Below are positions 23,853-54,646 of a stretch of DNA of 64,000 nt, piece by piece (position 1 is the stretch's first letter; each line of letters opens with the position of its first letter). The notes below the pieces were generated by a model. The model saw only the letters and a program-made list of their open reading frames with translations. It had not been told where the DNA came from and made no database searches. Source of the DNA: Podarcis tiliguerta (taxonomy: Eukaryota). The translations under genes were made by a program, and so were the position numbers. The stretch is taken from the NCBI GenBank assembly GCA_965153285.1, contig OZ229118.1, one strand, 5' to 3'.

Positions 23853-24052
23853 NNNNNNNNNNNNNNNNNNNNNNNNNNNNNNNNNNNNNNNNNNNNNNNN
23901 NNNNNNNNNNNNNNNNNNNNNNNNNNNNNNNNNNNNNNNNNNNNNNNNNNNNNNNNNNNNNNNNNNNNNNNNNNNNNNNNNNNNNNNNNNNNNNNNNNNN
24001 NNNNNNNNNNNNNNNNNNNNNNNNNNNNNNNNNNNNNNNNNNNNNNNNNNNN
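23853..24052. other. Assembly gap (200 N)
   Basis: Run of exactly 200 N, a placeholder size, so the true length is unknown. Confidence 0.99.
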
Positions 24053-24200: not shown

Positions 24201-24442
24201 CGCTATCTAAAGAGGCATTACAACCTCCGGTCCAACCCGGCTGGGATACAGAGGAAGGCAGGTGATACAGTCACATCCAAACTTCGAGAAATGCAGGCGT
24301 TTTTTGGACTGGAAGTAACGGGCAAGCTCAACGAAAAGACGTACGAACTAATGCAACAGCCACGGTGCGGCGTTCCTGATATTGGGGAATACAACTTCTT
24401 CCCTCGAAAGCTGAAGTGGTCTCACACTAATATAACATACAG
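24201..24442 (+). CDS. MMP13: Matrix metalloproteinase 13 (collagenase-3)-like exon 2: propeptide with cysteine switch and start of the catalytic domain
   Basis: CTAAT branch point, long polypyrimidine tract and CAG acceptor; AG|GTAATG donor; 242 nt, phase 0 to 2; [51 protein letters not shown] matches vertebrate MMP13 exon 2 as I recall it. Confidence 0.9.
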
Positions 24443-51607: not shown

Positions 51608-52710
51608 GTGTATATAGGCTGCCTCTGGCAATGAACTTACAAAAAGGCAGAAAACAGCATTTCAGGGGGAAAGCAAAGCAATGGGGCACCTAATAGAATT
51701 GAGCAGGATTGGCAGCAACAAGCAGCAGATAATTTCTTTGCTTATAAAAATATTTTATTATCTTGCAAATTATGCTGCTTTAAATGTGCATTTTATATAT
51801 GACTTCCTTTAGTAATGTTTTCTTTCGAAATGTTTAAGATTCTTGGTCAACTTTGCTGTTTTAAATGTGCAGTCTGTAGATGACCTTCTTTATAATGTTT
51901 TATTTCAAATTCTTGAATAGATTATTTTAGTTTCTCTACTTTCTATACAATTAGGCTGTATATCCAACCCATTATTCTGTTGGAAATTATTTGTACGTTA
52001 GTGGTCTATGCTTTTTGAATTTTTATTTTTACATAATACAAAGCTTTTTTTTTTTTTTTAAGGACATGAGTTACTCGTTGGATAAATTATTGTATGCTAT
52101 TTCTTGTCATATTATGGGTCTGGTCAGGAGCTCTTTATCACATTGGATTTATTTTTCTTCAATAGTATGAACCAAATACACATTATAAGGAGAATTCATA
52201 AATTCTTTCCCTTCTCCTATTGTATGGGAAGTTTGTGACAATGTTATTATGTATTTGAATAATACCTCTTTTTTTAAAAAAAAAAACCTCTTGCAGCGAA
52301 AAATGCTCAAAGGGAAGAGAAAGGGGAGCAGGGGTCAGGTTCTCTTCAGCTTTCAGATATTATGTAGGCAGTAATAGATGTGTCCTTCAGCAAAGGTCTT
52401 TTAATCACAGCAGGTCATATTTTGAGCTGCCGTTCAACATTCCTGCTTGTGATCTTAACAGGCAACAAAAGGAGCAGTTTAATAATGGACCTGGGTATTA
52501 CTATGTTCTTAATATTGCTAAATACAGTTTTTCTTCCTCTGAACCATTATCATAATCCTATGCCTACTTATTTTATTCAGCACTGAAGCTTTTCTCTCAT
52601 CTGCAGACTTTATAAATCAAAAGATGATAGCTAGATAGATACCACCTAGACTGATTTTCACAGGTCAAAACCAAAGGAGTGTTTATATATACTGGATATA
52701 TATATATATA

Positions 52711-53429
52711 TTTGCTTTCGTAGATTTTCACGGGTACAGGAATGCAGGTTTTGGTGTCCTCGGGTGTCTTCCCGTGTAAAAGTTGGGGTGTCTAGGCGAC
52801 GTTTCGACGAGGTCTCACTCGTCATCTTCAGGCTGGTGCTTTCGGCTTCTTGTTACTGGAACAGAGCAGGATCTCAGTGTTTGAGTTCCTATAAATACTG
52901 TTGAGGAGGTGTGGTGTATAGCCTCCAATGTTCTGGGCAGAGAGGAGGTTCCCAGGCTAGTGTGCCTTTTCTTCTTTTGTTCCTTAATTACTTGAGGGAT
53001 ATCTTGAGTGATTTCTTGAGTGATTTCCTGAATCCCACTTAGGTGGGTCATTAGGTGTGGATTAGTTGCTAAAGCCTTCGTGTCTTGAACTCTTGAACTT
53101 TGTGAAGAGTTTTTCTGAGAAGATGGCTGTACTGCACTTGGTTGTGCTCTGGCTTGGCTTCGTGTATAGGGGCGAGCTGTGGTTTTGTGGCCTGTGCCAG
53201 CCAGATCTGTGTAGGGATTGCAGGGGAGTGCAGCATCCGGAGGTGCCACCCTGGTTTGGCTACTGGATGGTGTCTGTAGTTTATCTGTGGAGAGGGTCTG
53301 GGTTTGGGTCTGGTGTGGTTGATTGGTGATGGCGTTCTGTGTGCCTCTGGATCTGGTGTCAGATTTTGTGGGGAGGGCTAATTTCCAGATGTCTGGCAAG
53401 CGGGATGTGTCGTCACGCTTGTTCATGTT
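52711..53429 (-). mobile_element. Penelope-like element 3' end (copy with extra 31-nt tail)
   Basis: Reverse complement of 53453-54140 plus a unique tail 52711-52741 (minus strand TCCTGTACCCGTGAAAATCTACGAAAGCAAA) abutting (TA)n. Confidence 0.85.
52798..52831 (-). ncRNA. Minimal hammerhead ribozyme core (mirror copy)
   Basis: Reverse complement of 54051-54084. Confidence 0.7.
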
Positions 53430-54135
53430 TCGAGATAGAGAAACACCCTCACAACATGAACAAGCGTGACGACACATCCCGCTTGCCAGACATCTGGAAA
53501 TTAGCCCTCCCCACAAAATCTGACACCAGATCCAGAGGCACACAGAACGCCATCACCAATCAACCACACCAGACCCAAACCCAGACCCTCTCCACAGATA
53601 AACTACAGACACCATCCAGTAGCCAAACCAGGGTGGCACCTCCGGATGCTGCACTCCCCTGCAATCCCTACACAGATCTGGCTGGCACAGGCCACAAAAC
53701 CACAGCTCGCCCCTATACACGAAGCCAAGCCAGAGCACAACCAAGTGCAGTACAGCCATCTTCTCAGAAAAACTCTTCACAAAGTTCAAGAGTTCAAGAC
53801 ACGAAGGCTTTAGCAACTAATCCACACCTAATGACCCACCTAAGTGGGATTCAGGAAATCACTCAAGAAATCACTCAAGATATCCCTCAAGTAATTAAGG
53901 AACAAAAGAAGAAAAGGCACACTAGCCTGGGAACCTCCTCTCTGCCCAGAACATTGGAGGCTATACACCACACCTCCTCAACAGTATTTATAGGAACTCA
54001 AACACTGAGATCCTGCTCTGTTCCAGTAACAAGAAGCCGAAAGCACCAGCCTGAAGATGACGAGTGAGACCTCGTCGAAACGTCGCCTAGACACCCCAAC
54101 TTTTACACGGGAAGACACCCGAGGACACCAAAACC

Positions 54136-54140
<5 letters not shown>
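53430..54140 (+). mobile_element. Penelope-like element 3' end (inverted pseudo-LTR copy, no tail)
   Basis: EIEKHPHNMNKRDD..LPDIWK resembles the end of the Penelope GIY-YIG endonuclease; open frame to TGA at 54065-54067; hammerhead core; ends in (TA)n. Confidence 0.85.
54051..54084 (+). ncRNA. Minimal type I hammerhead ribozyme core
   Basis: CTGAAGA-T, helix II GACGAG/CTCGTC with loop TGAGAC, GAAA, CGTC (GUC cleavage triplet); helix I only ~2 bp (GC/GC). Confidence 0.7.
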
Positions 54141-54183
<43 letters not shown>

Positions 54184-54298
54184 ATAGAACTTACTTCCAT
54201 AGAGATCAAGTGATCTTCATCTCTTGATGCTTTCAAGTAGACTCAGAAGAATTTCTATTTTTTTTCCTCTCTACAACTTTTAATGGCTGATTCAGATT

Positions 54299-54646
54299 GG
54301 GTGGCGCTGTGGTGTAAACCTCTGAGCCTAGGGCTTTCCAATCAGAAGGTTGGCAGTTCGAATCCCCACGACAGGGTCAGCTCCCGTTGCTCTGTCCCAG
54401 CTCCTGCCAACCTAGCAGTTCGAAAGCACGTCAAAGTGAAAGTAGATAAATAGGTAACGCTCTGGAGGGAAGGTAAACGGTGTTTCCATGCGCTGCTCGG
54501 GTTTGCCAGAAGCGGCTTAGTCATGCTGGCCACATGACTCAGAAAAACTGTCTGCAGACAAACACTGGCTCCCTCTGCCAGTAAAGCATCACAACCCCAG
54601 AGTCATCCACAACTGGACTTAGCTTTTGGGGTCCTTTATCTTTTAC
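54299..54646 (+). mobile_element. Sauria SINE
   Basis: GGGTGGCGCTGTGG head through GGGGTCCTTTA tail; CAGATTGGG duplicated at both ends. Confidence 0.9.

What the first reader, a model, noticed from the sequence alone, without database searches (positions are those of the whole stretch)
52696..54180. 1.4-kb near-perfect palindrome built from two head-to-head Penelope 3' ends inside a (TA)n tract
Seen: 688-bp arms with no difference I could detect, a 23-nt spacer that is in-frame Penelope coding sequence belonging only to the + copy, a 31-nt 3' tail on the - copy only, and (TA)n on both flanks. Known: Penelope-like elements form direct or inverted pseudo-LTRs with a short tail unique to the true 3' end, and some clades target microsatellites. 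Inference: this is one very recent insertion made by fold-back or template-switch reverse transcription. Long perfect palindromes are normally unstable, and any read-through transcript from either strand would fold into a ~690-bp dsRNA, a potential endo-siRNA or ADAR substrate able to silence the family.
Basis: partly seen in the sequence, partly recalled or inferred. Interest (0 to 1): 0.8.

Follow-up and report, generated by a model that had tools for sequence, protein, structure and literature searches.

The report
Head-to-head Penelope insertion in TA repeat
Two incomplete, mirror-image copies of a Penelope-like jumping gene sit head-to-head inside a TA repeat of a lizard genome. This is a known way for these elements to insert, so the finding is real on the sequence but ordinary, and I could not check it against raw reads.

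Summary
The arms are 52742-53429 and 53453-54140, 688 nt each with no mismatch. A 23-nt spacer lies at 53430-53452. A 30-31-nt extra tail lies at 52711/12-52741, on the minus copy only. (TA)n lies on both flanks.

The arms are the 3' end of a Penelope/Poseidon-type element. They hold the last residues of the GIY-YIG endonuclease region, a roughly 600-nt pseudo-LTR, a minimal hammerhead motif overlapping the next ORF's ATG, and the first 84 or 114 nt of that ORF.

The two outer ends fall almost exactly on the two reverse-transcription start sites mapped in vitro for the Anolis element PAc (tail = ORF nt 85-119). PAc also cuts and extends both target strands.

Each arm holds sequence the other lacks, at opposite ends, so a simple fold-back copy is excluded. 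Two primings on opposite target strands, joined at the centre, fit best.

Inverted truncated copies, one-sided tails, AT-rich or (TA)n targets and siRNAs from Penelope inverted repeats are all published. The scan has noted several similar Penelope palindromes elsewhere in this genome, one already followed up with the same verdict.

Expression is untested.

The parts
52684..52711 (.). Left part of the (TA)n target microsatellite. It is imperfect overall, with a perfect (TA)7 at 52697-52710.
   Evidence: TRF row; regex
52712..52741 (-). The 'tail': 30 nt (31 if T 52711 is counted) at the 3' end of the minus copy only. It equals ORF nt 85-114/115 of the next tandem unit and encodes SCTRENLRKQ.
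   Evidence: Has no partner on the right arm. Translation. The same 38 aa run on into a Penelope-type N-terminus in P0007. PAc's tail is ORF nt 85-119.
52742..53429 (-). Minus copy, 5'-truncated (688 nt). It holds the end of the ORF after the GIY-YIG core, the pseudo-LTR, the minimal hammerhead and ORF nt 1-84.
   Evidence: Exact reverse complement of 53453-54140. tblastn with P0001-P0005.
53430..53452 (+). Spacer of 23 nt. It is the further 5' continuation of the plus copy only and is in frame (-EIEKHPH-).
   Evidence: alignment A1
53453..54140 (+). Plus copy arm (688 nt; 711 nt with the spacer). It ends at ORF nt 84 and abuts (TA)n directly, with no tail.
54051..54084 (+). Minimal hammerhead motif, CUGAAGA-U-GACGAG/UGAGAC/CUCGUC-GAAA-CGUC. 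It overlaps the ATG (54057) of the next ORF unit. Its mirror image lies at 52798-52831 on the minus strand.
   Evidence: Read directly. It matches the four min-HHR traits listed in PMC4209133 and PAc's layout. No Rfam model reaches even E=10.
54140..54180 (.). Right part of the (TA)n target microsatellite, a perfect (TA)20-21.

Best explanation
This is one insertion of a Penelope/Poseidon-type retroelement (PLE) into a (TA)n microsatellite of a lizard genome. It was made by target-primed reverse transcription on both strands of the cut target.

One cDNA was primed from the right-hand bottom strand. It started at the proximal start site, ORF nt 84/85, and ran 711 nt. This is the plus copy. The other cDNA was primed from the left-hand top strand. 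It started at the distal start site, ORF nt 114/115, so it carries the 30-nt tail, and ran 718-719 nt. This is the minus copy.

The two cDNA 3' ends were then joined without visible microhomology. Most likely one cDNA jumped onto the 3' end of the other and copied it, which also supplies the second strands.

The result is a dead, non-autonomous, head-to-head pair of 3' ends with no reverse transcriptase and no endonuclease core. It has no host function. Its only plausible activities are a tendency to DNA hairpin or cruciform instability and, if it is ever read through, a long hairpin RNA.

Shown: the anatomy, the PLE identity, and the positional match of both outer ends to PAc's start sites. 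Inferred: double-strand priming, the cDNA-to-cDNA jump, and recency.

The confidence of 0.72 is for the whole statement. I put about 0.9 on 'a real PLE head-to-head insertion' and about 0.55 on the specific double-priming-plus-jump route.
For: PLE identity:
- The retained ORF end is 87-89% identical to P0001 and 59-88% to P0004/P0005. These run upstream into GIYEIPCKVCPATYIGQT, which matches Pfam GIY-YIG PF01541. P0004 is above the cut-off; P0001 and P0005 are just under it.
- The 38-aa N-terminal piece, tail included, is 68% identical to the start of P0007.
- P0007 continues ISDLYGEETFQ..EKL..LC..FL..CRD..IP. By eye this parallels PAc's IEHLYGEKLFQ..EKL..LC..FL..CRD..IP.

Layout:
- As in PAc, a CUGANGA...GAAACGUC hammerhead core overlaps the ATG.
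- The cut site is 25 nt past the start codon, against 26 nt in PAc.

Outer ends:
- With the ATG at 54057, the plus copy ends at nt 84 and the minus copy at nt 114/115.
- PAc has two RT start sites, and its tail is nt 85-119.
- In the protein alignment both tails end just before I-x-x-LYGE.

Neither arm is a copy of the other: the tail is only on the minus copy and the 23 nt only on the plus copy.

Published architecture: an inverted 5'-truncated copy, a 30-40-bp tail at one end and a (TA)n bias are described PLE traits.

Against an artefact: the flanks differ, the asymmetries match PLE biology, and the N gap is 29 kb away.
Against: - No raw-read or independent-assembly check was possible, so an assembly or polishing artefact is not formally excluded.
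- The near-equal truncation points (688 against 711 nt) are unlikely for two fully independent cDNAs, so some coupling is needed, and the one I propose rests on a single case.
- A small central deletion from an originally longer, spacer-less palindrome could have created the 23-nt asymmetry secondarily. That would weaken one half of the argument against fold-back.
- Double-strand extension was shown only in vitro, and for a different PLE family.
- Helix I of the hammerhead is only about 2 bp, and no Rfam model detects the motif.
Confidence: 0.72

Rival explanations
1. Fold-back (snap-back or self-priming) reverse transcription: a single cDNA folded on itself and copied itself, giving the palindrome. 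This is the reader's first option and is close to the self-priming hypothesis of Arkhipova et al. 2013.
For: The arms are nearly equal in length and identical, and the loop is short. Self-priming was proposed for head-to-head PLE repeats with palindromic junctions (PMC3846280). Other notes of this scan describe zero-spacer PLE palindromes in this genome (unchecked).
Against: The copy next to the loop (plus) would be the template, yet it lacks ORF nt 85-114, which the other copy has. The minus copy's tail is real element sequence, so it cannot have been copied from the plus copy. If instead the minus copy were primary, the 23-nt loop would be antisense on the top strand, and it is sense. The plus copy's end at nt 84 coincides with a mapped RT start site rather than a random joint.
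Confidence: 0.13
2. Assembly or read artefact: a chimeric fold-back read, or polishing that made two diverged arms identical, produced a palindrome that does not exist as such in the animal.
For: PLE tandem and inverted structures are known to trouble assemblies (PMC8557442). 100% arm identity is what polishing would give. No read-level check could be run.
Against: A fold-back read artefact mirrors everything, including the flank. Here the two flanks are different unique sequences. One arm has a 30-nt tail and the other a 23-nt extension, both at biologically meaningful positions. The scan noted the same architecture at several other places in this genome (unchecked). The nearest gap is 29 kb away.
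Confidence: 0.06
3. Two separate insertions of the same family into the same (TA)n tract at different times, which happen to lie head-to-head.
For: (TA)n is a preferred target, so repeat hits are plausible.
Against: No (TA)n or other target sequence lies between the copies. The arms are identical over 688 nt. The truncation points differ by only 23 nt, which I estimate at roughly 1% chance if they were independent over a unit of about 3.5 kb.
Confidence: 0.03
4. A DNA-level inverted duplication after a normal single insertion, such as a replication template switch or hairpin-capped break repair.
For: Such events make palindromes with short spacers in many genomes (general knowledge).
Against: This would not add a tail that the original copy lacks. 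It would also not end both arms at the two PLE start sites, with (TA)n on each side.
Confidence: 0.03

Closest known systems
Poseidon_Ac (PAc), the Penelope/Poseidon-clade PLE of Anolis carolinensis (Frangieh et al. 2024, PMC11167929)
   Same: - A single ORF with a C-terminal GIY-YIG domain.
- A hammerhead core overlapping the ATG, with the same GAAACGUC and a cut site 25-26 nt past the start codon.
- The 3' end of insertions lies inside the next ORF, at about nt 85 or nt 115-119, so there is an optional tail of about 30-34 nt.
- AT-rich target.
- N-terminal LYGE...CRD...IP motif in the relative P0007.
   Different: - A different family; the nucleotide and protein sequences are not alignable by eye outside the motifs.
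- Here the ORF frame stays open through the whole ~600-nt pseudo-LTR and stops 8 nt after the next ATG, whereas PAc's ORF stops 126 nt before it.
- This locus has no reverse transcriptase or endonuclease core at all.
Inverted pLTR structures of Penelope (D. virilis) and Pen2a_Av (Adineta vaga), and the general PLE scheme of Craig et al. 2021
   Same: An inverted 5'-truncated copy abuts the unit head-to-head. A 31-bp (or 30-40-bp) tail lies at the 3' end of only one of the inverted pLTRs. The pLTR includes the first codons of the ORF.
   Different: The published typical form is an inverted pLTR next to a full or partial-tandem unit. Here both members are short 5'-truncated 3' ends of almost the same length, so the whole insert is a near-perfect palindrome with nothing else.
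L1 twin priming (Ostertag and Kazazian 2001; recalled from my own knowledge, not checked here)
   Same: The second target strand's 3'-OH also primes reverse transcription, giving an inverted segment joined to the normal one inside a single insertion.
   Different: In twin priming both cDNAs copy different parts of one RNA, so an inversion results rather than a palindrome. Here both arms copy the same 3' segment, which needs two templates or a multimeric tandem RNA, and each starts at a defined internal site.
Naiad/Neptune PLEs with (TA)n insertion bias (PMC8557442)
   Same: Insertion into a (TA)n microsatellite, so no target-site duplication can be read.
   Different: Naiads have an N-terminal endonuclease and lack canonical hammerheads. 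This family has a C-terminal endonuclease in its relatives and a minimal hammerhead.

Membership tests
Penelope-like elements, EN+ Penelope/Poseidon type | C-terminal GIY-YIG endonuclease with Cys motifs in the ORF | tested here: met
   The locus keeps only the ~25 residues after the core, which are invariant against all relatives (alignment A1). P0001, P0004 and P0005 run upstream into GIYEIPCKVCPATYIGQT, which matches PF01541. P0004 scores 25.0 bits, above the 22.6 cut-off. P0001 and P0005 score 20.5-20.7 bits, just under it. The feature is therefore met for the family by homology and is absent from this truncated copy itself.
Penelope-like elements, EN+ Penelope/Poseidon type | PLE/telomerase-like reverse transcriptase | tested here: inconclusive
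   No RT sequence lies in the locus or anywhere in the window (tblastn). P0005 carries an RYVDNTF stretch upstream of its endonuclease, comparable to PAc's RYVDDTF. My Pfam scan at E<=0.01 returned only GIY-YIG.
Penelope-like elements, EN+ Penelope/Poseidon type | Pseudo-LTR carrying a (minimal) hammerhead ribozyme motif | tested here: inconclusive
   [quoted passage not shown] These are the traits listed in PMC4209133. Helix I is only about 2 bp, and no Rfam hammerhead model reaches E=10. Cleavage was not tested.
Penelope-like elements, EN+ Penelope/Poseidon type | 30-40-nt tail present at only one end of the insertion, lying inside the start of the ORF | tested here: met
   The tail is 30-31 nt at 52711/12-52741, on the minus copy only, and equals ORF nt 85-114/115. 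It runs on as ORF sequence in P0007. PAc's tail is nt 85-119.
Penelope-like elements, EN+ Penelope/Poseidon type | 5'-truncated copies in tandem or inverted (head-to-head) arrangement | tested here: met
   Two 5'-truncated copies lie head-to-head with a 23-nt offset.
Penelope-like elements, EN+ Penelope/Poseidon type | AT-rich or microsatellite target | tested here: met
   (TA)n directly abuts both outer ends.
Endo-siRNA / hairpin-RNA locus | Transcription through the inverted repeat, with 21-23-nt small RNAs or A-to-I editing mapping to the arms | not testable with these tools
   No listed holder run is on record as RNA. Only the folding potential is shown.

The most novel reading that the evidence does not exclude
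The insert may be a frozen product of concerted, near-synchronous reverse transcription on both target strands by a dimeric PLE particle. One cDNA started at each of the two mapped start sites. The two cDNAs are almost the same total length, 711 against 718-719 nt. The tail-bearing arm is shorter at its 5' end by about the length of the tail.

If a census of this family's many inverted pairs showed this equal-length rule, it would be the first in vivo evidence for how PLEs build inverted pseudo-LTRs, and for two active sites working in step.
Probability: 0.2. Interest if true: 0.55.

Novelty: new member of a known kind. Interest (0 to 1): 0.27.

Why it matters
In itself it is one more dead Penelope-like insertion. 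Its modest value is as a clean natural example. A single event records both reverse-transcription start sites that were mapped in vitro for the Anolis element. It also argues against a simple fold-back origin of head-to-head PLE repeats.

With the other PLE palindromes noted in this genome, it could support a census that tells apart double-strand priming, run-off on a short RNA, and self-priming. On the practical side, such perfect palindromes are places where assemblies, read mapping and repeat annotation can go wrong. They are also candidate fragile or hairpin-RNA sites.

Tried and rejected
There is therefore no read evidence. only reused a local BLAST database of the window as the target.
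- Pfam on the 242-aa junction ORF gave nothing meaningful, only Fer4_8 at E=0.028.
- Rfam gave only generic miRNA-hairpin matches at the palindrome centre, all below their gathering scores, and no hammerhead even at E<=10. I reject the miRNA names as an effect of any perfect hairpin.
- The 38-aa exhaustive search also returned P0006, a low-complexity tandem-repeat protein, which I regard as spurious.
- RNA folding of the start-site region gave no significant structure, z = -1.1. I therefore do not claim the AC-rich stem-loop described for PAc.
- Motif scans for the rest of the MMP gene found no HExGH zinc site in the window. I cannot say whether the palindrome lies in an intron.
- I did not compare PAc's consensus to the window by computation, because it has no reference and would have had to be typed. 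That comparison is by eye.

Full report
**1. Observation**

Reading 52400-54500 and an exact string test show two arms, 52742-53429 and 53453-54140. Each is 688 nt and they are perfect reverse complements.

- They are separated by 23 nt (53430-53452).
- The repeat finder reports 693/13 because it runs on over five partly pairing positions. That longer version fails the exact test.
- Left of the left arm lie 30 nt (52712-52741, or 31 with T 52711) that have no partner on the right.
- Outside these lie an imperfect (TA)n at 52684-52711 and a perfect (TA)20-21 at 54139/40-54180.
- The sequence beyond the microsatellite differs on the two sides.
- The arm has no other copy in the window.
- The only N run is at 23853-24052.

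**2. What the arms are**

The plus-strand frame through the right arm is open from the spacer to a TGA at 54065-54067. Pfam sees nothing in it, because only the last residues of a domain are kept.

The word search found five relatives:

- P0001 is 368 aa from a Logan assembly, 87% identical over 90% of the query.
- P0004 and P0005 are from Phrynocephalus forsythii, one of them named a GIY-YIG domain protein.
- P0003 comes from an ENA contig.
- P0002 is a Podarcis muralis gene model.

In alignment A1 the window's copy begins at (F)EIEKHPHNMNKRDDTSRLPDIWKLAL. This stretch is invariant in all relatives. Upstream of it, the relatives carry GIYEIPCKVCPATYIGQT...AEHKNA, which matches Pfam GIY-YIG. 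P0004 is above the cut-off, and P0001 and P0005 are just below it.

At the other end, an ATG at 54057 opens an ORF (MTSETSSKRRLDTPTFTREDTRGHQNLH...). In the plus copy this ORF is cut off by (TA)n after nt 84. In the minus copy it goes on for ten more codons, SCTRENLRKQ, which are the tail.

It returned P0007, which is 68% identical over all 38 residues from its own Met. P0007 then continues ISDLYGEETFQLTRTYEKLEVRRATILCDIAFLRNCRDKNVIP. Read against the published Poseidon_Ac protein (...RQHIEHLYGEKLFQDTRRLEKLRTRKAHLLCSLTFLLRCRDTDTIP) this is plainly the same N-terminal region. This comparison is by eye and was not computed. The tail is therefore real element sequence that continues the ORF, not filler.

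**3. Layout compared with the Anolis element PAc**

Frangieh et al. 2024 (PMC11167929) report the following for PAc:

- A hammerhead overlaps the start of the ORF, with its cut site 26 bp past the start codon.
- Reverse transcription starts internally at two neighbouring sites.
- The genomic tail of about 34 nt is the stretch between those sites, nt 85-119 of the ORF.

In the window:

- The motif at 54051-54084 reads CUGAAGA-U-GACGAG-UGAGAC-CUCGUC-GAAA-CGUC, and its A9 is the A of the ATG.
- The cut site would be 25 nt past the start codon.
- The motif shows the traits that Cervera and de la Pena list for PLE minimal hammerheads: an extra nucleotide after position 9, a G10.1-C11.1 pair, a long helix II, and a palindromic 15.2-16.2 (PMC4209133).
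- Rfam does not detect it and helix I is very short, so I call the motif present and its activity untested.
- The plus copy ends at ORF nt 84 and the minus copy at nt 114/115.
- In the protein alignment both tails stop just before the I-x-x-LYGE motif.

The two outer ends of this one insertion therefore sit on the two start sites known from PAc.

**4. Mechanism**

The two asymmetries lie on opposite copies. The minus copy has the longer 3' end (the tail). The plus copy has the longer 5' end (the 23 nt).

In a fold-back, the strand next to the loop is the template of the other arm. It must therefore hold all that the other arm holds.

- If the plus copy were primary, the minus copy could not have gained nt 85-114.
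- If the minus copy were primary, the loop would read antisense on the top strand, and the plus copy would be expected to carry the tail. Neither is seen.

So neither arm is simply a copy of the other, and two primings are needed. With PAc's both-strand cleavage and extension, the simplest account has three steps:

1. Nicks form in (TA)n on both strands.
2. One cDNA is made from each 3'-OH, one from each start site.
3. The two cDNA 3' ends join without visible microhomology (...CATGTT | TCGAGA...). This could be an end-to-end template jump of one cDNA onto the other, which would also give each its second strand.

Two fully independent cDNAs would rarely stop within 23 nt of each other, so the lengths must be coupled. 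I note that the total lengths are 711 and 718-719 nt, which is almost equal. That fits two enzymes working in step better than run-off at a common RNA 5' end, which predicts equal 5' ends. This rests on one case and is only a lead.

A later small central deletion of a once spacer-less palindrome could also have made the 23-nt offset. It would not explain the one-sided tail.

**5. Age and reality**

Zero differences in 688 paired sites suggest a recent event. At about 1e-9 substitutions per site per year (my assumption), the 95% bound is roughly 2 million years. Gene conversion within the palindrome, or assembly polishing, could also keep the arms identical.

I could not test the assembly:

- The look-up of sequencing runs shows 20 runs from 9 studies and three organism labels holding 0.23-0.77 of the sampled words. 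Without laying them I cannot say which part each holds.

Three points argue against an artefact: the two different flanks, the two biologically placed asymmetries, and the distance from the gap. The protein collection holds no ORF identical to the junction-spanning one (best hit 87%). That gives no help either way.

**6. Consequences**

A read-through RNA would fold into one uninterrupted hairpin at -1479 kcal/mol. Whether the locus is transcribed is unknown. I found no further MMP exons downstream of the cysteine-switch exon at 24360-24380, so I cannot place the insert in an intron.

Penelope inverted repeats giving dsRNA and siRNAs is already reported for Drosophila (PMC3681739). Antisense small RNAs against PLEs are reported for Adineta vaga (PMC3846280).

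**7. Comparison and novelty**

Inverted 5'-truncated copies, a 30-40-bp tail at one end, the (TA)n bias, and the trouble these structures cause assemblies are all described (PMC8557442; PMC3846280).

The scan's own notes list several more Penelope palindromes in this genome. One, s1-821243, was followed up with the same verdict. These are leads, not evidence.

I file this as a new member of a known kind. What is specific here is the minimal form (nothing but two short 3' ends) and the clean one-event record of both start sites.

**8. Limits kept**

PAc's sequence was only read, not typed into a tool.

Noticed in passing
window 53429-54067 (+), mirrored at 52815-53453 (-): The element's ORF frame stays open through the whole ~600-nt 'pseudo-LTR'. 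It has 1 stop against 10-11 in the other two frames. It ends 8 nt after the next unit's ATG, inside the hammerhead. The same long, low-complexity, A+C-rich C-terminal extension ending in HQPEDDE is open in P0001, and in P0003 at only 48% identity. In this family the pLTR therefore looks coding, unlike PAc.
   Followed up: partly
window 54051-54084 (+) and 52798-52831 (-): A minimal hammerhead motif overlaps the ATG of the element's ORF, once on each strand because of the palindrome. It matches the published min-HHR traits but no Rfam model finds it. This is the subject of the separate note s1-821347.
   Followed up: partly
P0002 (UniRef A0A670HLY4_PODMU), residues 177-268: The last 92 residues of a Podarcis muralis 'translin associated factor X' gene model are 94% identical to this element's pLTR reading frame. 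This is either an annotation chimera or an exonised PLE fragment.
   Followed up: no
window 52712-53429 against 53430-54140: The two copies have nearly the same total length, 718-719 against 711 nt. The tail-bearing copy is shorter at its 5' end by about the length of the tail. This may hint at synchronous synthesis, but it is a single case.
   Followed up: no
window 24360-24380 (+), N run 23853-24052: An MMP cysteine-switch motif, PRCGVPD, lies just after the scaffold gap. No HExGH zinc-site motif occurs in any frame of the window, so the rest of the catalytic domain is not here, at least in recognisable form.
   Followed up: partly
window about 54290-54470 (+): A stretch with a tRNA-like head (..GGTTGGCAGTTCGAATCCCCA..), typical of squamate SINEs by my recollection, lies about 110 nt right of the insert. 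ARAGORN calls no tRNA there.
   Followed up: partly
window 52029-52073: The reads tool's filter tripped on this stretch, which includes a T15 run at 52045-52059. It cost the only read-laying run. I worked beside it afterwards.
   Followed up: no
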